A DNA stretch of 63,829 nucleotides from Ostrea edulis (lineage: Eukaryota): the NCBI RefSeq assembly GCF_947568905.1, contig NC_079170.1, positions 9,610,172 to 9,674,000 on the forward strand, in the 5' to 3' direction. The position numbers and the translations under genes were made by a program. The first letter of the stretch is position 1. Every line of letters begins with the position of its first letter. The notes under the pieces are model-generated. The model had not been told where the DNA came from. It worked only from the letters and a program-made list of their open reading frames with translations, and made no database searches. Of the stretch, positions 7,676 through 21,400 are shown in pieces.

Positions 7676-10026
7676 ATGGCAGATTCACCGAGCAGATCTA
7701 ACCTAGTTTCTCCCAACTCTGAGGCTTCTGGAAAGAAATCTAGTAAGTTTTCATACTTTTCTTGTCAAAGAGTCGTGTTTTTTTTTCCGTTGGAAATTTT
7801 ATATTGTCATGTTTTCCCTTACAATCACATTATACCAAGGACCTATATAAAAATAGATGAAATGTACAATTCTGTTAAAATTAAAATTTCCTTTGAATCA
7901 CCAATGGCACAGAATGCAAGAACTATTGAGGGAACTTTTAATATGGCATTTGTAAAAGTGGCGAGTTTTACATCTAGTTACATATACAACAATACATGCA
8001 TAGTGATTGCATGTATACACATTTAATAAAGATATGTAGACCCTGATTTCTGTGGAAACGAGGGGGTTGTTTATATTCGGTCTTGATAGGAAAGACGGAA
8101 TATAAATAACCCCCTCGTTTCCACAGAAATTATATAGACCCTATGACCCAATAAATTTTGAAAAATGATTTCTCTTGATATTCCACATAAGGTACTATCA
8201 TGGCATATATAGTTTAAGTAATATACATTTCAACACTTTATTTTCAACATGGCTTATTATTTTTACTGAATTTTCACATTGGATTGCACGTTATCAGTGA
8301 TTTTTATTTTATTTTTTTTCAACCTACCACCCTTCCTTTTGAATTGGGAAAAATTAGCAACATTTTCCTCAAATTGGGAAAAATCATTCATAGTCAATTA
8401 AAGATGCATAAAATAATCAAATAACATTTTTTTTTAGGTTTATTTCAGATCCGATTTTAAATCATAAAATAAATCATTATTTAACATTAAATATATATTG
8501 GAAGTCACACCGTCCTTGTATAAATATTATTTACTTTTTCTAAGAAATACTTATTGTCTAATTTCATAAACAAAATAATAAATTATTAATTCACCAGCAT
8601 TTGTACCCATAATCTTGTAAATATTATATTGATAATCAAGTTTCCAGAATGTCTCTCCTGTTTGTATTTTTCGGATTTTAGTAAAACCCTTTCCTGTTGG
8701 CTACTTCCTGTTATTAGCCTGACCCTACATATAATGGCGGTCAAACTAAATTGTCAACAATATGGCTTAATGTGCATCTGGAAACTATATACTTCGCTGC
8801 ATATCTGCTTATATGGATGCCTCTATTGTTTTACATATTGTTTACAAAACCTTTTGCATGTGCAGTGGTTTGGAGAATAAAACTGAAGGAAAAAACGTAT
8901 TTACTCCTTGTCAGCAATATACAGTAACTTTTTTTTCAATGGCCTAATTTCCCTAGATTTGAAATTGGGAAAAACTTATATATATAATTGGGAAAAAATA
9001 GCTAATTTTAGTGAAGGGAAACAGCCGAATATCGGTGGCATTTTGGCCCCCAAAAAATCACCGAGTTATTCGTTATATGAGTTAATGAAGGTTTCCACCT
9101 ACTGTTTTTGATAAATTGGAGTAAACTTGATATAGTCAGGTCTATGTGGTAATTTTGTGTATGGTGATGTAAGCCAGTTCTGATCTGGCATTGATGTAAT
9201 TGTTTTAGATGTACAAATGTACATGTATATAGAAAAGAGGAGAAAATTTTTGGCTGGACTGGGAATCGAACCCGAGACCCCTGCATTACTAGTCAGTAAT
9301 CTCAGCGAGATTCATCGAGGCTGGATATTTGGACTGACGCCTAAGAGGTGTCAGTCCAAATATCCAGCCTCGACGAATCTCGTTGAGATTATACTAGTCA
9401 GGTGCTCTAACCACTTAGCTATCCAGGCTGATATCCATGGTCTGTATAGCCCTTATTACTACGTTCCTCCCTCCTTAACTTGTCTTCGCCCTCGAAGACA
9501 CACACAACCCAGTTTTTTGTTGCCCCTGGCAGGACATCCTTTTAGTGCAAGGGTGGTCAACGGCATCAAATGTAGTATATAGGAGAGAAGAGATAATCTT
9601 TGGATGGACCTGGAATCGAACCTGGGACCCCTGCATTACTAGTCAGGTGCTCTAACCACTGAGTTATCCAGGCCGATGATCCACAGTCTGTATAGCCCTA
9701 ACTATTACATTCCTCCCTCCTCAATTTGTCTTCGCCCTCGGGTTCAATTTCTGGTCCAGCTACAGATTTTATCCTCTCTCCCATACTAAATTTGGTGTCA
9801 TTGATCACCCCTGCATTGCAGGTTGTCCTGCCAGGGGCAAAAAGAACCGGAGTTGAGTGTGTCTTTGTATGGGGAAGACTAATTAAGGAGGGAGGAATGT
9901 AATAGTTAGGGCTATATGGACTGTGGATATCGGCCTGGATATATATAGCTCAGTGGTTAGAGCACCTGACGAGTAATGTAGGGGTCCTGGGTTCAATTCC
10001 CAGTCCAGCCAAAAGGTTTTCTCCTT

Positions 10027-10065
<39 letters not shown>

Positions 10066-13000
10066 AAGCTTTAGCACTTTCATTACATACACTAGCTGCT
10101 ATGGATACATTTTTGTAAAGCTTCTGAAGATGTAATGAAAGCGCTAAAGCTTTACGGGGAGAATTTCAGGATTTCTGTGTTTTCTTTTCATATTTTTTTA
10201 ATGAACTTGGTTTGTAAATGATGTTTGATCATTTTCCTTACAGCAGAAAGTAAATTTGATTACATTTTCAGGCATTGAAATTGATACATGTAAATTGTCA
10301 TTTATTATCATCTTACTTTACTTCATAGGACAAGATGGATCGCGACAGTCAGGAAGAGTTACCTTCCCTAATTCTGCCAAATCCGTATCTTCTGTATTGT
10401 CAGGTGTTTATGATTAACTTTATAATTTATCAAACTTTTCAAGCTTGAAATCTTTAAGATACATGAAATTGAATATCATATTACCAATGTTTTAATAACA
10501 GTTAAAATAATTTCACTTAAAGTATAGACTGGCCCTGGCACTAAAGATATGGAATTCAAAATTGTGTATCGTTATAATGAAGTCTATAGATAATGCTGAT
10601 ACTATTTATGATGATAATGATAATGTTCAAACTTTTCTGTAACCCACAACAGTAATATTTGATTTGTTGTAACTATGATTTAAGTTGTTTTTACACTTGT
10701 TGTAGATGAGCTAAATGTTCCTCAAGGAAATCCATTCAAGATGCCTGCAGACAGTGACATATTTGTTCTTAGAGATAAAGAAAGACAGAGGAAAAAACTT
10801 GTAAGAACTTTTTAAAAAACATTCCTGATCAATAAAAACAACTACCATTTTATTATGGTTGCATGGGTATAAAATGTTTTCAAGTTTATGAATTGTAATT
10901 ATAAACTATAATCCAATTACCAATTCAATATATCTCTCAATAATGATATGGTTTGTTTAAGTAATTACTTCTATCCACAAGATTTAACTCTTTGAATCAA
11001 TTTACTGCATAATTGTTTTTAAAAATCTGTGATGTCATACAATATCATGACATACTTATTTTTCAAACTTTCATGTACAAATCATTTTTAAATATTGGAA
11101 TATAAAAGAATTCGAAGATTCTAAAGCAATTATAAAATTTTGCATTACATCTGAAATAAAATTGTGCTTTCTTGACTTAAAAGGAGAGGGAAAAACAACG
11201 GAAACTGAGGGTTCATGAAAAAACAACATACGCATCAAAAGTAAACTTCCGCACAGCATCGATGATCAAACCAGCAGACTCAGATGAAGAGAGGGACATA
11301 GAGGACTCAGACAAAGCTATCGCCGTGAAGGACGATCCGGAACACACCATCGCAGTTACACGAGGTGAGACCAGCTTCGAATATTTGAAAATGTTGGAAA
11401 TACAAATCTTGCTTGCCTATTTAATGTATACAAACAATATATAGTCTACTCTAGATATAATGAAATCTAGGGGACCAACCTGAATTATTCATTATACCCA
11501 AAGTTCAATATAAGCAATGTTGAATTATGTAAAAAATGTTATTGGGGATTTATTTTTACTTTGTTATAGGAATAGACTCCACTTGTATCATGTACATGCT
11601 GGTTTTTCCTTTCACTGAATAATTAAAAAGTCACACTTTGGATGCCCTGATCCTTACCTCAACTTTCTATATTGAGTAAATTGTTATTTTAAAGCACTGT
11701 TGAAAGGACTAGAACAGAGCTCCATGCAGATATTTTTTATACCACAAAGAGTATTTATCCCCTGATTTTCAAATCAATGAGTATTTTGGTTTTCAGAAAA
11801 ATTCAAAAGTGTATATTTTGTTAATTTACTGATTATCTTTGCTCTTTTGCACAGAAGATGTCACCAGATAAACGATACTTCTTCCATTGAACTTTAACTG
11901 AAAGTTGATACTAAATTGCCGCTCCAGCTATTTACAAGGAAAATCCTTTGTAGTTCTTTTTATTAACACTATTCATTGTCATTGGGAATTCGTTACATGT
12001 ATTTATGATTGATGCATTAAATTTGAATATGTCAGACACTCAGTCACATGATTATGATTCAATTCTGCATATCATTCGTCCACGATTGACAATACAAGTT
12101 TTTTTCCCTGTACTTTCGACCGCACAATAACTCTTTAAGAAAGAAAGTATAACAAGTAGGCCTATGCAGTAGTGTTTTGAGTTAACTCTTCCAATTTTTC
12201 AAAATTGTGATTGTCATCAAAACGTATTTCATAGCGCTAAATATCATGTATGATCAAGCCCTGGGCTAACCTCAATTCATATGAATAGATAATTCATATC
12301 TATATCATACTACATGTATCACAAATACGTGGACTAATTAATACGCATTACTTTGGGAGTGTGAGCGTCTTTACATTCGCTAATGCGTAATTATACGCAT
12401 GATTTTCAACTTAAATGTGTATTTGGTAGAATTTAATTAGTATTTACACTGATACGCACCTTATCTGGAGCTCTGACTATAATAGATTCCTTTTCATAGA
12501 TTAGAATTAAGTATTTTGTGCCCCCAAGTTTGAAGATTGGAGATGGGGGATATTGTTTTTATTTGTCTGTAATTCTGTCCAAAACTTTAACCTTGCTCAT
12601 AATTTTTGAATGGTGAATGGTGGGGCTCTCATATTTCTTTATGACAAAACCTCATTTATTAGTATTTTTCTTTGCTGATTACACACTTTTTTCTCAATTA
12701 TTAATGAATTTTGTTGTTCTTGATTGTTTTGTTTTTGTCATTCATTGTAATGCTTCAATAAAAGTCTAGAAATAGTTGCCTGATGGCTAAACTGAAAAGG
12801 GTAGCAAGATCATTTTAAAATCACATATACACATGTAATTACAAAGTTTTACTTATCAGCCCATCCTTTATTTTAAACAGATCGACACGTGGAAAAGGAA
12901 TCTCTAGCAGAATACATAGCCAAGAAGAGGGAAATGTTTTTAGTCCAAGTATGTAAAACTGTTTGCTGTAATATCTAGGGCTTAAATAACACACGTCCCC

Positions 13001-16000
13001 TTCATGATACGATACATATTGCAATACTTATGATTCGATTCAATGCTTTCAATACATTACAATTTACAGAAGAAACCAATAATAGAATTGAAGAAAAATT
13101 TAATTACCAAGATTCAAAATCATAATTTTAAAAGCAAGATATTTCCAAACTGCCAAACGGTAAGATGCCTGTTGGCTCTGTAGTTTAAACTGATAAAATT
13201 CATTATTATTTTTGTCAGACTCAAGGCAAACAACAGTCTGAACGTTATTCAACACTATTTTGTCCCTCATTCAGTTCATTATGATATAAGTACAGGCCGA
13301 GTCTGATACTGAACCAGATTGTAAGAAACGTATCAAACCAAAAATCGAGGCAATGAATCAAACATTGAATCGAGCGTTTATATTGAACAGTATTGATATT
13401 TATGTTCATCGTTTCAGCCCTACTAATATCCCCTCAATCAGGTTCAGCTCCTCATTTTATTGATCTGGCATGCAGTGTATGCGAGTGCCTGCCACATGTA
13501 GTAACAATTTAAATTTTTTGTCAGTACTCGCTCGGTGTTAAAAGGAATGAAATGAGCAAGCTGGAAGAAATCTCCCAGGCGGAGGAAAAGAAGCTAGATC
13601 TAGCAGAACTTTACCTCCAGGAAGATGCTGCCATGTTTGATGAATTCCTCAAAGAGAATGACCACGGGTCCAATGAGGCGGTCAGGGAGTAAGTATTTCT
13701 TTAAACATTATCCATATATGTCATTCTGTCAGATCTATGTCATTCTGTCAGATCTCTGTCATTCTGCGACATCTGCTTTAGAGGCAGATTTATAGTAAAA
13801 TCCTCCTTTCTGTATGCATGAAAAAAAAATATATAACAACATTTAAATTGATAGGGATTTGTTGAAATTAAAACATTTATTGCAAAACATATATATTCCT
13901 ATTTCTATCATTTTGTCTATGATTTGAGTAATTGCATTTTAATGTTAGTATTGAACCATCCAAATGTGTTTGTAGTAGGGGAATTTCTCATAAAAGTAAT
14001 TTATATCCTTTAAATTCACGTGTTGTAATTAGTAAACTTTCAAAGGAAAATATGAAATTTATTATTTTGAATCTAGTAGTGAGAAGGAGACTCGGGAGAA
14101 ATCCGAGAAAGTAGTAGAGATAAAACAGATCTCGAGTGTCATAATGACTGTTCGATCAGAAATCACAAAATATGAAGACATGTTGAGAGAGTATGAAATG
14201 TACAGGAAGTTCTTGGATAGGCTCACTCCCAAGGTTGGTTTACATCTGAAGCTTTGGAAGGGGGATGAGCGTAGAAATCGTGTGAATGTAGTGCACGTGT
14301 TGGAATTTAGTGTATTATTGTGGCACCTGAAAGGTCTGGACAATATCTAATGCATACTGATATATGATATACGTGTAAGACGTGTCATCTTGTTGTACAG
14401 TAGAGTCAGTCAGAAAAATGTTTCAAAGTGTACATTATCCGACCTAAGCCCAGTAAGGCCAGTGGTGGTTACATGTCTGTCAAAAAAAAAGTGATTTAAA
14501 TGTCAGAAATAATTAAACGTATTTTTATGCATGTAAAATGAACCCCACCTCCTAAAAGAAGAGACAAAAAAGCATGAAATTGACTGCTTCACACCATATG
14601 GGCTTAGTTCCTGTTATATTTATGGTATCACAGAGTTTGGGCACAAACGGGCTTAGCCCTGTGCTTCACAAAAGATTATTGCTTGATATGAATGTTATAT
14701 TTGAAATCATTTATCATGGTATATTTTGATGCGGCTTTTAACAGGGCTGAGAATGAAACAAAAGCTAAACTAGAAAAAGTGGCAGAAATCAAGAAAGTGA
14801 ATGCAGCAATGATGGCAATTAAATCCGAAATTTCTAAATATGAAGACACATTGAAAGAATACCAAATGTACAGAAAATTCTTGGACAATCTCACACCTCA
14901 GGTTTGTGGGTTCAGGTGGCACTGCTTATATTCTTTACAGGATGTACCATAACTGTGTAAAAGCACTAGTCCCATAGTGTGTATACATGTACATGTAATT
15001 CAATAGTGTACATTTTCCTTATTTTTTTTATTTAGAAATCCTTGCTTGTTGAAGGATTTTGATTTCAAATCATTGAATGGCATTTCAAGTAAAACATCAT
15101 GATATGAATACTAGCAAATATAAGATAGTATGACTGTATAAACCTGTATATGTTCTTTGTAATGGGAGTTTAAATCCAAACAGGACTGGCGCGATAAGAA
15201 AGAGAGACAAAAAAGGAAAAGACGGGACGAGAAGAAAAAAGCCAAAGAGCAGGAGATGATTGCGTATAAAAAGAGTCTTCTAGAGGCAGACCCAAAGGAC
15301 TTTAAAGCCAAAAAGAAAGCAGCACCCAAACCCACCCCTGCACCCCCAGCCAAAACTGGGGCCCCTGCCAAAAAGTAACGACAAGAACAAAGCACATAGA
15401 TTAATTACAAGTTAATTCAAAGTTAGACAAGATCGAGGGAAGTCAGCAATTTTTTCCTACTTTCAAAGCTGTCTGATAAAACCCATGCTAAGATATAGAT
15501 TTATATTATATCTGATTGTGCACAGAAATGCATTAAAAAAAAAAACATATAGAAAATGAAATGGGCACTTTAGTGTTTTAAATGTGAATATACTGTGTAT
15601 TATTTGTAACTTTACTTTCAGAATAGAGGAAGCAGACCTCGGGGAAGAGGAGGATGACGAGAGTGATGAGGTTAGTCTTATTATTTCACGGCCATGAGAT
15701 CAAGCACCACTCTGTTACAGAGAGGCAATACCATTATGAACTGAAAGTATTGAATGCATGCGTAACTTACAGCAAAGCGTACATCACCTGCTACATGTAT
15801 ACCAGACACTCCAGGGTCATTTCAAGGTTGTCAATGGTCAAGGCCAAGTGAATGTGGCATGTGATAAACAGTTCTTTTTTATACAAATTACATTGTATTT
15901 CTTTAATTTTATATTGAAAATAACATAGATTGATTGGGGTTTTACGCCGTTTTGGCAATATTTCAGCCATTTTACGGTGGGAAAATTACGTAGAAGAAAA

Positions 16001-18406
16001 AAACATAATGAATGATACATGTAATTGACGTGTTACAACATTTACAGATTTAAAAAAGAGTAATGGTAACAATGATTATTTAATCCACAGGTACCTACTA
16101 TATTACTTTACATGAAGAGGTTTCTACAAAATGTACTGCTCTAGCTTTTTTTTTTAGATACACAGAATTTATTCAAACAGAATTTTATTATTTAAAGTGT
16201 AAACCTGTAAAGTAAATTTCAGTGTTTTATTTCAGGATCTGGAATTATTCTTTGCACAGCCCCAAGAACTCCTGGACATTTTTGCCGATTTAGAGGAACA
16301 GAATTTATCTCTCATTCAGAACAGCCAAGAAACAGAGGAGGCATTAGAAGAAATGAAACAAACAATTAAACAAACAAAAGTTAAAATGTTAGTGATACCA
16401 ACAAAAAACAAATTAAATATTGTAAATTGCTCTACATCATGTTAGAAATCTAATTTGAAACTTTGTAAGTATCATCCCTCACATCAGAGTAGTGAAGGGT
16501 GTTCCCAAAGTATGAAATAAAACTGGTATCCTTTGTACATAAGCAATCTAGACTAAATATGATTTGACCCTTTTAAATAATAATTTCGTTCTCTAAGAAG
16601 AGCATTTCAAGATTTTAAAGGGACATGGACACGATTTGAGCTGAAAAATTTTTAAATTTTATTTTTGGATTTTTAATGTTTAGAATGTTTAACTAAGGTA
16701 TTACTAATGATCAGCAAAAATATGAATATCGGTAGTCAAGGTACATGGGAGATACAGAGGTCACAAGTCCTTGTTATGTAACTAGGGTTTGTGCCACGTT
16801 TTTGTTTACATACTAGTAAAAGTTTCATTTAACACAGATTTTTTTCAGTTTATAAGTGTATTCTTAACACAACTGAATAGTTTCTAGTGTTTGGCACATC
16901 TCATTTTGTTTTAAACATGCTTTTTTCTATTAAACAGTCTAATGTAAACAAAAATATGGCACGAGCCTTCTTTACATAACAAAGAATCACAGAAGCTGTA
17001 TCTCACTTATAACAAAACAACCGATATTCATATTTTGGTTGACCATTAGAAATACTTTAGTTATTCATTGTAAAAAATAAAAATAAAATTTCAGCTCAAA
17101 TCGTGTCCATGCCCCTTTAAAAAAGATAAAAATCAAACCCAGCAGTTTGATTTTCTTCACATTAATTTACCAATGTATTTCATGATAATTATTAATGGCT
17201 GATATTTCATGATAATTATTAATGGCTGATATTTCATGATAATTATTGATGGCTAATATTTCATGATAATTATTGATGGCTAATATTTCATGATAATAAT
17301 TATTGATGGCTAATATTTCATGATAATTATTGATGGCTAATATTTCATGATAATTATTAATGGCTGATATTTCATGATAATTATTAATGGCTGATATTTT
17401 TTTTTTCAGGGAAAAGGAAACTTCAATATTGAAAGAACAAATAGACAAATTAAATTCACAGATATCCCGCGAAGAAATAAAGGCAGCAGATTTAAAAACT
17501 AAAGCGAGGTAAAAATTTTGTTAATGGTTTAAAGACGCACTTCACTTGTATATTTCCAATATTTTTGCCTTTGATATCTTTACAAATTGTGATGATAGCC
17601 ATTATCTTCATGAATGTGTTGCACGTACGAATCTCGATAGATATAGTTCATCTATTTTAACGAGTGAGAATTCCAACAGAAGTGAATATACATGTAGAAT
17701 GTAAATGCAGAAAATGAATTTCCTTTTTTGAAATACACAAAGGTATGAAATGCGATGCTTCATGCTGGCATACTTCATCAAGCGTGTTATCAATTCATCA
17801 AGCATGTTACCAATTCATGATACTGCTGGGAAGCATTGCATTTCATACTCTCATGTATTTTTAAAAATTTTAAATCTATTTCTTAAATTTCCTATTGCTT
17901 CGTGCGATTGTGTTTATCCTTGAATTATGGTCATTAATTTAATTGGAATAAAGGTATAGAAACTTTTTGCATATTACAAATGGCTATGTATATATGGCCC
18001 AGCATCAAACACATTACTACACTGAATGATCAAAGACTAGTACTGGAGAAGCAAATGTAAATGTTTTTTTTATATAATTCAGTTCTGATCTGCTCTAGTA
18101 GTTAGACTGAAACTGTACATCAACTGATTTTGTTGTTTTGTTCAGTGAAATGCTTAAGACAATACAGAATTATGTTGTTTTGTTCAGTGAAATGCTTAAG
18201 ACAATTCAGGATTGTGGGTTTGTACTCTTCAGGAAGTAATGCATGTTTCGGAAAACCCCTACATATGCACCAGAATACTGGGATCAGCATGATATACTAT
18301 AATATATATATATATATCAATATATTGTGTATCTGTTCATATACAACAAGCTAGGACCCACGACCCCAGTCACAAGTTTTACCATGGATTTCATTAATAT
18401 CCCAAC

Positions 18407-18454
<48 letters not shown>

Positions 18455-21400
18455 CTCCAAGATTTTGGACCATGTATAAAAAAAATGTAATAATGATACT
18501 GACAGTTTTTCAAGTCTGAAAATAGTTTTAATATCTTTCTCAGTGCCACCACCTTATACTATGCATAACGCACAAATATTTTAAAAATTCAGTAAGTTTT
18601 AATTAATTTCATTATAAAAGTACAGCTTATGCAATTCATGCACAGCAATACCATTTTTCTTTCTATTTCTTTCTAGGTTATTTTCCTATGGTGAATTTAA
18701 AGCAGAGGACCAGCAGAAGATGTTAGATTCACTAAATTCCCGAGTTGAGGAAGTATATCGATCAAGTATTGGTGACAATGAGGCAAACATTAGGTTAGTG
18801 CACTTTCTGTAACCATAGCAACCTTCTGTGCAGGTCTCTGATTGGTGGTAATGCTGGTACTAGGCAGTACAGGGTCTTTGGTCCAGACTTGTAAATGTAT
18901 GACTAATGACATATTCATTTTAAGATTAGACTTACTCATTGCATTACTGGCATTTCCTTTGCTAGATTTCGGAGTTAAACATGCTAAATATATTTACAGT
19001 ATTTTTGATGATTCATTTTTTGATTTATCATTTATTTATTTGCTCTTTTCTTCAAAAGAAATCTGTCATTCAATTCATGTATTATCATTTCTTTCATCTC
19101 AATAGGATCATTTACTCAAATCATTGCATTGCTGTCATACATTTGCTCAACTCGTGATATTTTTAATGCTTCAGCTTTTTGTTAACAATGAGTTATCTCC
19201 CCAAAAGATATGTAAAATAATTGGCTACTTTAAAAAACATTAGATACTCAAAATTAGATTTTACCAAACATTAACACAGTAGGAATTGTATAGTTGTGTG
19301 TGCTTTACTAATTGAAATTAATAGCGCTCGCTGCGTTCTTTGAAAACGGGAGATAACTCTTACATATCTGGACGGACAGCATGCCTCTCTGTTCTCAGAC
19401 CTGTGGAAGGTTGCTTAAACAGATTGTCAGTATCCTATTATGTTGTGCATTCTTGGCACCTGTTTCTGTGCGTACATTTAACCAATGGGAGAAGGTAAAA
19501 CAAAATTAATTGTTTTTAACACTCAAGGTGCAGGTTCAATGTGTACATTTACGTCCCGGTGGAAGGAGTATACTACATATTACATGCAATAGTTTTGAGA
19601 ATCAACTAGCTTCATTAAATTGTGAAAACTGGCTGTACTACTCACTGGTTTATGGGTTGTAATTCAATCAATGTGTCAAAAGGAAATAAAACGATTGAGA
19701 TCCGAGACTAAAATTGATAGCTGGGGATCTGAAACAGAAAAAAAAAATTCATTAAACAGTTAGCGTCATAAAGAAAAGACACTGTCATTGTATGGAACTG
19801 GTGTTAGTCCTCAGAAATTGTACTTGTAAATCACAAGTGTAAACCTTATTTCAAAAAGGTCATCTGCCATGACGATATTTTTGATGTCATACTGATGTTT
19901 TGTATTACAGTAACTGCATGTTTCTTCAATGTATATTGTAGCACGTTACAGATGTTAACTAATATAGAAAACAGGTTAGAAGAATTATTTGAAATGATAG
20001 AAACAATGCCACAAGATAAAGTGGAAGCAGCAGAAAAGGTAAGCCTGACCGAAAAGTCTCCATTCCTTGTGTAAAATTGCGGTCTTCTTTCCGTGAAAAC
20101 CTGTAGTTAAAATCTCAGGGAGATCCATGTAAACCTGTAGTTAAAATCTCAGGGAGATCCGTGTAAACCTGTAGTTAAAATCAAAGAGGTCCGTGTAAAC
20201 CTGTAGTTAAAATCTCAGGGAGATCCATGTAAACCTGTAGTTGAAATCAAAGAGGTCCGTGTAAACCTGTAGTTAAAATCTCAGAGATCCATGTAAACCT
20301 GTAGTTAAAATCTCAGAGATCCATGTAAGCCTGTAGTTAAAATCTCAGGGAGATCCATGTAAACCTGTAGTTAAAATCTCAGAGATCCATGTAAACCTAT
20401 AGTTAAAATCTCAGAGATCTTTGTAAACCTGTAGTTAAAATCTCAGAGATCCATGTAAACCTGTAGTTAAAATCTCAGAGATCCATGTAAACCTATAGTT
20501 AAAATCTCAGAGATCCATGTAAACCTGTAGTTAAAATCTCAGAGATCCATGTAAACCTATAGTTACAATCTCAGAGATCCGTGTAAACCTGTAGTTAAAA
20601 TCTCAGAGATCCAGGTAAACCTGTAGTTAAAATCTCAGAGATCCATGTAAACCTGTAGTTAAAATCTCAGAGATCCATGTAAACCTGTAGTTAAAATCTC
20701 AGAGATCCACGTAAACCTATAGTAAAAATCTCGGGGAGATCCATGTAAACCGTAGTTAAAATCTCAGAGATCCATGTAAACCTGTAGTTAAAATCTCAGG
20801 GAGATCCATGTAAACCTATAGTTAAAATCTCGGGGAGATCCATGTAAACCTGTAGTTAAAATCTCAGAGATCCATGTAAACCTGTAGTTAAAATCTCAGA
20901 GATCCATGAAAACCTGTAGTTAAAATCTCAGAGATCCATGTAAACCTGTAGTTAAAATCTCAGAGATCCATGTAAGCCTGTAGTTAAAATCTCAGAGATC
21001 CGTGTAAACCTGTAGTTAAAATCTCAGAGATCCATGTAAACCTATAGTTAAAATCTCAGAGATCCATGTAAACCTATAGTTAAAATCTCGGGCATATCCA
21101 TGTAAACCTGTAGTTAAAATCTCAGAGATCCATGTAAACCTATAGTTAAAATCTCGGGGAGATCCATGTAAACCTGTAGTTAAAATCTCAGAGATCCATG
21201 TAAACCTGTAGTTAAAATCTCAGAGATCCATGTAAACCTATAGTTAAAATCTCGGGCAGATCCATGTAAACCTATAGTTAAAATCTCAGAGATCCATGTA
21301 AACCTATAGTTAAAATCTCGGGGAGATCCATGTAAACCTGTAGTTAAAATCTCAGAGATCCATGTAAACCTATAGTTAAAATCTCGGGGAGATCCATGTA

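What the first reader, a model, noticed from the sequence alone, without database searches (positions are those of the whole stretch)
14077..14901. CFAP100 carries a tandemly duplicated 157-nt exon predicted to be spliced mutually exclusively
Seen: exons 14077-14233 and 14745-14901 have identical length, identical phases (2 in, 0 out), intact splice sites and open frames, and encode homologous 52-aa peptides (31/52 identical by my count). Many shared residues use different codons (gag/gaa, tat/tac, agg/aga, aag/aaa, gat/gac, act/aca, ccc/cct), which suggests an old duplication under purifying selection. Including both shifts the frame (157 is not divisible by 3), so only one can be used. Established: CFAP100/FAP100 partners CFAP73 in the MIA complex that regulates inner-arm dynein I1/f, and this segment lies in the conserved DUF4200 coiled coil. 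Inference: two axonemal isoforms, for example sperm flagellum versus gill or larval cilia. I am not aware of this being described, but cannot search the literature here.
Basis: partly seen in the sequence, partly recalled or inferred. Interest (0 to 1): 0.75.

Follow-up and report, generated by a model that had tools for sequence, protein, structure and literature searches.

The report
Oyster CFAP100 alternative exon pair
The flat oyster's gene for a ciliary motor regulator (CFAP100) has two copies of one exon, and each mRNA uses one or the other; public gene models already show both forms, and the pair also exists in pearl oysters and mussels, so it is a real, old, but ordinary kind of alternative splicing.

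Summary
Exons 14077-14233 (A) and 14745-14901 (B) are both 157 nt, have AG/GT boundaries and are open in the same phase. They are 31/52 identical in protein and both encode positions 68-119 of the DUF4200 domain of CFAP100.

The window is Ostrea edulis. RefSeq already models both forms: isoform X1 (XP_055999216.1) uses B and X2 (XP_055999217.1) uses A. Both are 592 aa and differ only within residues 217-269.

- **RNA:** contigs from four studies all join exon 6 to B to exon 8. One low-depth contig joins exon 6 directly to A. The A-to-exon-8 junction was not seen in reads.
- **Frame:** including both exons, or neither, gives an early stop.
- **Other bivalves:** the same arrangement, a divergent copy upstream of the canonical one and both 157 nt, exists in Mytilus californianus (annotated X1/X2) and in Pinctada imbricata (alternative exon unannotated). 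Cupped oysters and the scallop Pecten lack it.
- **Origin:** shared residues Arg6, Glu7 and Ser19 and a topology test (p-AU 0.03) favour one old duplication with later losses. Long-branch artefacts are not excluded.
- **Constraint:** all alternative exons evolved under protein-level constraint.

Tissue use is untested. I found no paper on it. The scan noted other exon pairs of this kind in this genome, in other genes.

The parts
7676..23291 (+). CFAP100-like gene of Ostrea edulis (extent of the coding exons found)
   Evidence: tblastn of XP_055999216.1 (P0216) on the window: 14 exon blocks, exon cores 100% identical.
13525..13688 (+). Constitutive upstream exon ('exon 6'); ends in phase 2, donor GTAAGT
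   Evidence: Pfam DUF4200 positions 14-66. Joined to 14745 in four RNA runs and to 14077 in one contig.
14077..14233 (+). Exon A (7a): the divergent, minor alternative exon, 157 nt; its first base T makes the junction codon Asp
   Evidence: Open frame. DUF4200 44.7 bits. RNA contig X1 record 2 covers 14077-14225 and is preceded by the last 10 letters of exon 6. Present in RefSeq isoform X2 at residues 218-269.
14745..14901 (+). Exon B (7b): the canonical, major exon, 157 nt; its first base G makes the junction codon Glu
   Evidence: Open frame. DUF4200 53.8 bits. Joints 13688>14745 and 14901>15184 in all four RNA runs. Present in RefSeq isoforms X1 and X3. Peptide identical in cupped oysters, with all 21 base differences synonymous.
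15184..15374 (+). Constitutive downstream exon ('exon 8'), phase 0 in
   Evidence: Joints in RNA contigs. Follows either A or B in isoforms X2 and X1.
14915..14922 (+). Intronic motif GGTGGCAC, 14-21 nt after exon B's donor; candidate splicing control element
   Evidence: GGTG(G)CAC lies at the same distance after the canonical donor in Ostrea, Pinctada, Mytilus, L006 and L008. It is absent in cupped oysters (L009, L004) and Pecten, which lack the alternative exon. Its function is inferred, not shown.
14320..14331 (+). Intron A-B segment complementary (11 of 12) to 14911-14922; weak candidate for a pairing that loops out exon B
   Evidence: Inverted repeat I5. Duplex -24.1 kcal/mol, matched by 2.5% of shuffles. 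No counterpart in Pinctada or Mytilus, so it is probably chance.

Best explanation
This is a tandem-duplicated, mutually exclusive exon pair in the flat oyster's CFAP100 gene. CFAP100 is the FAP100 subunit of the MIA complex, which helps dock and regulate inner-arm dynein f/I1. Each mRNA takes exon B (the canonical, major form) or exon A (a divergent, minor form). This gives two 592-aa proteins that differ only in a 52-residue stretch of the DUF4200 coiled coil, which pairs with CFAP73. Exclusivity is enforced at least by reading frame: 157 is not a multiple of 3, so including both or neither gives an early stop, and such mRNAs are expected to be degraded. That degradation is inferred, not shown. 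Both exons have weak GTT donors, which fits regulated choice. A conserved intronic motif after exon B's donor may take part, but this is untested. The alternative exon most likely arose once, before oysters, pearl oysters and mussels diverged, and was later lost in cupped oysters and scallops. The alternative exons keep the hydrophobic core positions but consistently carry Arg6, Glu7 and Ser19. Ser19 replaces an almost invariant Asn that, by the heptad pattern, probably sits in the coiled-coil core. So the likely effect is a MIA complex with altered pairing or contacts in some cilia type. That last step is inference.
For: Structure and frame. Same domain segment. CFAP100 identity. B-form joints in four RNA runs from four studies, and the 13688>14077 junction in one contig at depth 3.1 against 14.7 for the B contig of the same run. 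RefSeq X1 and X2 are 592 aa each, with 22 differences all within residues 217-269, and X2 reads exon 6, A, exon 8. Mytilus californianus X1/X2 differ at 30 positions within 217-265, and its locus has the order exon 6, alternative (157 nt), canonical (157 nt), exon 8. Pinctada has an intact unannotated 157-nt alternative exon upstream of the canonical one. Quartet sites pairing alternative with alternative: 13:2:4 and 11:1:1. The tree with three independent duplications is 12.0 lnL units worse, p-AU 0.030, while alternatives-as-one-clade is not rejected, p-AU 0.54. Arg6, Glu7 and Ser19 occur in all four alternative exons and in 1, 0 and 0 of 32 canonical sequences. Constraint: 0 of 20000 neutral simulations reach the observed similarity, only 11-15% stay open, and all alternative exons pass the DUF4200 threshold. 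MIA background: PMC3628515 and PMC10266980.
Against: The junction from exon A to exon 8 was not seen in reads, because the one A contig stops 8 nt before the donor. It rests on a RefSeq model whose RNA support I could not inspect. Exon A was seen in one of four runs only, at low depth. Two word searches for transcript-derived proteins carrying A were blank. The single-origin reading could be a long-branch artefact: the ML support for the alternative-exon clade is low (37/42), the KH and SH tests do not reject independent origins (p 0.10 and 0.11), and three-taxon site counts are unresolved (8:7 and 10:9). No tissue data, no protein data and no test of NMD were available.
Confidence: 0.85

Rival explanations
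1. Exon A is a rarely spliced duplicate with no distinct protein role. Its inclusion would be splicing noise or an unproductive event, and RefSeq X2 would be an over-prediction.
For: B dominates in every run. A was seen in one contig at about a fifth of B's depth. No transcript-derived protein with A was found. Cupped oysters and Pecten do without it.
Against: The open frame, splice sites and 157-nt length are kept in Ostrea, Pinctada and Mytilus. Similarity is far above neutral expectation. Two Mytilus species differ at 3/52 residues in the alternative exon against 2/52 in the canonical one (rows). The acceptor is used precisely in RNA.
Confidence: 0.08
2. The pair is a functional mutually exclusive exon pair, but the alternative exons of oysters, pearl oysters and mussels arose by independent duplications of the same exon and converged.
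For: Exon A shares MYRKFLD with Ostrea's own exon B where Mytilus has MYKKFLD, and groups with oyster B against L006 (16:7). The KH and SH tests do not reject independence. The alternative exons are long branches that attract each other. Convergent tandem exon duplication in orthologous genes is documented in general (PMC9741552). Independent origins need fewer losses.
Against: p-AU is 0.030 against independence. Quartets are 13:2:4 and 11:1:1. Arg6, Glu7 and Ser19 are shared by all alternative exons and essentially absent from 32 canonical sequences. The order is the same, with the alternative exon upstream, in all three. Neither the Mytilus alternative exon nor exon A is closer to its own species' canonical exon than to the other species' (5:13 and 10:9).
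Confidence: 0.25
3. Exon choice is governed by competing RNA structures (a docking site and selector sequences) as in insect Dscam, rather than by frame and NMD plus protein factors.
For: In Ostrea, 14320-14331 pairs 11 of 12 with 14911-14922, which contains the conserved motif.
Against: About 2.5 such 12-mers are expected by chance in 1.5 kb. No comparable partner exists in Pinctada (38-43% of shuffles do as well) or Mytilus (12-26%). The consensus local fold is -2.6 kcal/mol with no real covariation.
Confidence: 0.07

Closest known systems
Tandem duplicated exon substitution events (homologous mutually exclusive exons), as catalogued for human, fly and worm (PMC8373072, PMC9741552, PMC5740500, PMC9013439)
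   Same: Adjacent homologous exons of equal length and phase. One or the other is used. Substitutions are mostly conservative. The origin is old. Both copies are under purifying selection. Convergent or conserved events occur across phyla.
   Different: The gene: I found no report of CFAP100/CCDC37 or any MIA-complex subunit with such an event. The event is restricted to some bivalve lineages and has been lost in others.
RefSeq gene models XP_055999216.1 / XP_055999217.1 (Ostrea edulis CFAP100-like isoforms X1 / X2) and XP_052079802.1 / XP_052079810.1 (Mytilus californianus X1 / X2)
   Same: These are exactly this event. X1 carries the canonical exon, X2 the alternative one, and they are otherwise identical.
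   Different: They are automatic models without description. They do not link the oyster and mussel events, the unannotated Pinctada exon, the losses or the intronic motif.
MIA complex FAP100/FAP73 of Chlamydomonas and CFAP100/CFAP73 of mammals (PMC3628515, PMC10266980; PDB 8GLV, 8J07)
   Same: Orthologous protein. The variable 52 residues align with human 218-269 and Chlamydomonas 185-235 inside the coiled coil.
   Different: Those organisms are described with a single form of this segment. Here two alternative versions are encoded.
Frame-enforced (NMD-coupled) mutually exclusive exons
   Same: The exon length is not a multiple of three, so double inclusion or double skipping gives premature stops.
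   Different: NMD of the aberrant forms was not tested here. The 511-nt intron between A and B rules out steric hindrance. Both introns are GT-AG without U12-type donors, so spliceosome incompatibility is not the mechanism.

Membership tests
Tandem duplicated, mutually exclusive homologous exons | Two adjacent exons are homologous to each other | tested here: met
   31/52 aa and 101/157 nt identical, same DUF4200 profile positions; tblastn E = 4e-16.
Tandem duplicated, mutually exclusive homologous exons | Same length and phase, each with its own intact splice sites | tested here: met
   Both 157 nt, AG|...|GT, phase 2 in and 0 out. The same holds in Mytilus and Pinctada.
Tandem duplicated, mutually exclusive homologous exons | Mature transcripts contain exactly one of the two | tested here: inconclusive
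   B-only contigs in four runs. A's 5' junction 13688>14077 in one contig. A's 3' junction was not covered. A-only and B-only RefSeq models exist, and none has both. No contig with a 14233>14745 joint was listed.
Tandem duplicated, mutually exclusive homologous exons | Both copies kept by selection | tested here: met
   Neutral simulations: 0/20000 reach the observed similarity. Intact alternative exons in three lineages. Exon B changes between oyster genera are all synonymous.
CFAP100 / FAP100 (MIA complex subunit) | DUF4200 coiled-coil domain, and best similarity to CFAP100 rather than to other DUF4200 proteins | tested here: met
   Pfam PF13863 on three exons. The top PDB matches are CFAP100/CCDC37 chains 8J07, 8GLV and 9FQR, with other DUF4200 proteins far weaker. 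100% match to O. edulis 'CFAP100-like'.
CFAP100 / FAP100 (MIA complex subunit) | Forms a heterodimer with CFAP73 and associates with dynein f/I1 on the doublet | not testable with these tools
   Known for Chlamydomonas and mammals (PMC3628515, PMC10266980). Not tested for either oyster isoform.
RNA-structure-controlled mutually exclusive exons (docking/selector type) | Conserved competing base pairings between a docking site and a selector next to each exon | tested here: not met
   Only a marginal pairing in Ostrea, none in Pinctada or Mytilus. Weak consensus fold.
Sterically exclusive exons | The intron between the two exons is too short to be spliced | tested here: not met
   The intron between A and B is 511 nt in Ostrea, 682 in Pinctada and 958 in Mytilus.

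The most novel reading that the evidence does not exclude
A switch hundreds of millions of years old in pteriomorph bivalves makes two kinds of MIA complex. The alternative exon replaces a buried Asn of the CFAP100 coiled coil with Ser and adds an Arg-Glu pair. This would change pairing with CFAP73 or contacts with dynein f, tuning beat in one cilia type (for example sperm flagella against gill or larval cilia). The choice would be set by a factor that binds the conserved GGTG(G)CAC element after the canonical exon. That element was lost together with the alternative exon in cupped oysters and scallops.
Probability: 0.25. Interest if true: 0.6.

Novelty: new member of a known kind. Interest (0 to 1): 0.4.

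Why it matters
Cilia of one animal beat very differently: sperm flagella, gill filter cilia, larval swimming cilia. How much of that difference is set by isoforms of axonemal regulators is poorly known. An alternative coiled-coil segment in the MIA complex, the docking and regulating factor of inner-arm dynein f/I1, has been kept under selection in oysters, pearl oysters and mussels. That makes it a concrete, testable candidate for such tuning. The natural losses in cupped oysters and scallops offer a built-in comparison. As a splicing event it is an ordinary tandem-exon substitution already present in automatic gene models, so its value lies in the gene and the evolutionary pattern, not in a new mechanism.

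Tried and rejected
1. I first took a group of hits (P0011, P0020, P0030 and others) for exon-A orthologues. Locus L001 shows they are the single exon 7 of another organism, equidistant from A and B, with Asn19 and no Glu7.
2. I considered exon A a recent Ostrea-specific duplicate because cupped oysters lack it. I dropped this after finding alternative exons in Mytilus and Pinctada.
3. Long-range RNA pairing and a local hairpin over exon B's donor were not supported. The first pairing script timed out.
4. Word searches for transcript-derived proteins carrying A found nothing useful.
5. The amino-acid tree alone could not place exon A.
6. The comparison between L007 and the window shows 0 differences in exon A, but with substitutions only about 2 were expected, so this is not significant.
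7. L008 has a shorter mussel-like exon with its own acceptor, and the contig is too short to interpret.
8. P0044 had no contig on record.
9. No Rfam family lies in the introns.
10. The species of L006 could not be identified.

Joined step: I sent no self-joined spliced model to any search tool. Exons were searched one by one by reference, and full-length comparisons used database proteins. The only local join was exon 6 + A and/or B + exon 8 inside a script, to read the frame.

Full report
**Observation.**
The two segments are in the sequence exactly as described. Exon A is 14077-14233 and exon B is 14745-14901. Both are 157 nt and are bounded by AG and GT. Both are open for 52 codons in the frame handed over by the upstream exon 13525-13688.

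They share 31/52 residues and 101/157 bases. Of the 31 shared residues, 16 use different codons. Synonymous difference is saturated (0.88) and non-synonymous difference is 0.23.

Each peptive alone passes Pfam's threshold for DUF4200 over the same profile positions (68/69-119). The upstream exon covers positions 14-66, so the two are alternatives for one segment of one domain.

Both match CFAP100 of solved axonemes at the same residues and with nearly equal scores: human 8J07 218-269, Chlamydomonas FAP100 8GLV 185-235, and 9FQR. Neither copy looks decayed.

Including both exons gives a stop at once. Skipping both gives a stop after 24 codons. That frame check was the only place where I joined exons, locally in a script.

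**Whose gene, and what is already on record.**
A full-length search from a snail homologue returned CFAP100 proteins from many animals. The O. edulis protein XP_055999216.1 matches the window's exon cores at 100%. So the window is the European flat oyster, and the gene spans about 7676-23291. An earlier scan note had already called the genome an oyster.

Its 90% cluster also holds XP_055999217.1, isoform X2. X1 and X2 are both 592 aa and differ at 22 positions, all within residues 217-269. X1 has the exon B peptide. X2 has the exon A peptide, preceded by Asp instead of Glu, as exon A's first base T predicts, and followed directly by exon 8. So the A-only and B-only forms are already automatic gene models.

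I found no paper that mentions such an event in CFAP100/CCDC37 or in another MIA subunit.

**RNA.**
Only one reads call was allowed, and the runs were held as contigs. In all four runs, from four studies and three coded organisms, the long transcript contig joins 13688>14745 and 14901>15184. This is the B form.

In run X1, whose contigs match the window without differences, a separate 159-nt contig covers 14077-14225. It is preceded by ten letters identical to 13679-13688, so the junction exon 6 > exon A exists in RNA at the predicted acceptor. Its depth is 3.1, against 14.7 for the B contig of that run, which is only a rough guide. The contig ends 8 nt before A's donor, so the junction A > exon 8 was not observed.

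A low-depth contig in X5 crosses A's acceptor unspliced. Two word searches for transcript-derived proteins carrying A were blank.

**Relatives.**
The exhaustive search with the exon A peptide returned mostly single-exon ORFs of the canonical (B) type from genomic contigs.

- **Cupped oysters:** contigs of the Pacific cupped-oyster group carry exons 5, 6, B, 8 and 10 in order. Intron 6 is only about 515 nt and shows no trace of exon A, and this recurs on dozens of contigs. L004 has the exact C. angulata peptide, and L003/L009 differ from it by one residue.
- **Exon B conservation:** its peptide is identical between Ostrea and these oysters, and all 21 base differences are synonymous. B is the conserved ancestral exon and A is the fast copy.
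- **Mytilus:** two 581-aa forms differ only within residues 217-265. M. californianus X1/X2 and two M. galloprovincialis entries show this. The M. californianus locus has exon 6, a divergent 157-nt exon, the canonical 157-nt exon and exon 8, in that order.
- **Pinctada imbricata:** it has an intact 157-nt alternative exon at L013 6167-6323, with AG/GT boundaries. It is upstream of the canonical exon and absent from the deposited protein. Like exon A, it begins with T.
- **Pecten maximus:** about 570 nt separate exon 6 from its single exon 7, with no extra copy.

All alternative exons pass the DUF4200 threshold alone.

**One origin or several.**
- **Quartet-informative sites** pair alternative with alternative: 13:2:4 for Ostrea/Pinctada and 11:1:1 for Ostrea/Mytilus.
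- **Three-taxon counts:** neither exon A nor the Mytilus alternative exon is nearer to its own species' canonical exon than to the other species' (10:9 and 5:13).
- **ML trees over 36 sequences:** forcing the alternative exons into one clade costs 0.34 lnL (p-AU 0.54). Forcing three lineage-specific duplications costs 12.0 lnL (p-AU 0.030, but KH 0.10 and SH 0.11). With Pinctada left out, the tests were inconclusive.
- **Marker residues:** Arg6, Glu7 and Ser19 are present in all four alternative exons and in 1, 0 and 0 of 32 canonical sequences from cnidarians to chordates.

I read this as favouring one duplication before the oyster-mussel split, which from general knowledge is several hundred million years old, with later losses in cupped oysters and scallops. 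Long-branch attraction and convergent selection remain possible. I put the single origin at about 0.65.

**Constraint.**
I placed each alternative exon's observed number of base differences at random on its canonical partner. This keeps the frame open in 11-15% of trials, and none of 20000 trials reaches the observed similarity: 176 observed against 81 +/- 15 for Ostrea, 131 against 62 for Pinctada, and 124 against 55 for Mytilus. Between two Mytilus species the alternative exon differs at 3/52 residues and the canonical at 2/52 (rows).

**Mechanism.**
- **Shown by sequence:** frame incompatibility of double inclusion or double skipping; a 511-nt intron between A and B, so no steric block; ordinary GT-AG introns; and weak GTT donors on both exons.
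- **Inferred:** NMD removes the aberrant forms, and trans-acting factors set the ratio.
- **Conserved motif:** GGTG(G)CAC lies 13-22 nt after the canonical donor in Ostrea (14915-14922), Pinctada, Mytilus and two unidentified contigs. It is absent in the lineages that lack the alternative exon. It is a candidate control element.
- **Tested and not supported:** long-range pairing of this motif and a local hairpin over the donor.
- **Other RNA:** the introns hold no Rfam family.

**Function.**
MIA is a FAP73/FAP100 coiled coil that bisects the tails of dynein f. It contributes to docking dynein f and links to an outer arm, and its loss slows beating (PMC3628515; PMC10266980).

The alternative exons keep the hydrophobic positions (12, 15, 22, 29, 36, 42, 46). 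They replace the almost invariant Asn19, which by the heptad spacing is probably a core position. That register assignment is my inference. A changed pairing or contact surface in a subset of cilia is therefore the likeliest role. Which cilia is unknown.

**Verdict.**
This is a real, selected, old mutually exclusive exon pair: an ordinary kind of event in an interesting gene. It is already present in gene models and, as far as I could find, not in the literature. The scan has noted other such pairs in other genes of this genome.

Noticed in passing
L012:5710-5866 and L012:6825-6981 (Mytilus californianus, GCA_021869535.1): Mussel CFAP100 has its own 157-nt alternative/canonical exon pair at the same position, annotated as isoforms X1/X2. 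M. galloprovincialis has both forms as separate entries (VDI26690 / VDI26691).
   Followed up: yes
L013:6167-6323 (Pinctada imbricata, GCA_033119305.1): An intact, open, AG/GT-bounded 157-nt paralogue of exon 7 lies between exon 6 and the canonical exon. It is not part of the deposited protein KAK3102468.1, so it is probably an unannotated alternative exon.
   Followed up: yes
window 14902-14925; L013 7163-7190; L012 6982-7005; L006 243-270; L008 241-265: The intron start after the canonical exon is conserved as gtttgtg, then 4-6 nt, then GGTG(G)CAC, across oysters, pearl oysters and mussels. It is missing in cupped oysters (L009, L004) and Pecten, which lack the alternative exon.
   Followed up: partly
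window 14745-14901 against flanking exons, run X7: In a related species' transcript, exon B has 4 differences in 154 nt, against 20/164 and 15/194 in the neighbouring exons. This unusually low synonymous change is often seen in regulated alternative exons.
   Followed up: partly
L001:5515-6180 and L002:1027-1344 (ENA metagenome scaffolds): An unidentified organism has a single exon 7 that is equidistant from A and B (about 60% identity to each). It mixes features of both: Arg6, Arg26 and Thr30, but Asn19.
   Followed up: partly
L008:145-240 (JGI metagenome 3300042712): A mussel-like contig in which the exon 7 homologue starts at an internal acceptor (about 96 nt, from exon position 20). It is either a split exon or a partial copy, and the contig is too short to tell.
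   Followed up: no
O. edulis isoform X3 (P0285) against X1 (P0216), residues 433-443; window about 17510-18690: A third annotated isoform replaces 11 residues by 1, which suggests an alternative splice site further downstream in the same gene.
   Followed up: no
window 17167-17448 (- strand ORF) and 13714-13774: Intronic tandem repeats: a minisatellite whose translation repeats INNYHEI(S/L)A about nine times, and three 19-nt units (ATxTATGTCATTCTGTCAG) just after exon 6.
   Followed up: no
P0152 (JGI/IMG, 98 aa): A read-through ORF of exon B on a metagenome contig is named 'tRNA splicing endonuclease' by its source. This is a misnomer for a CFAP100 exon.
   Followed up: no
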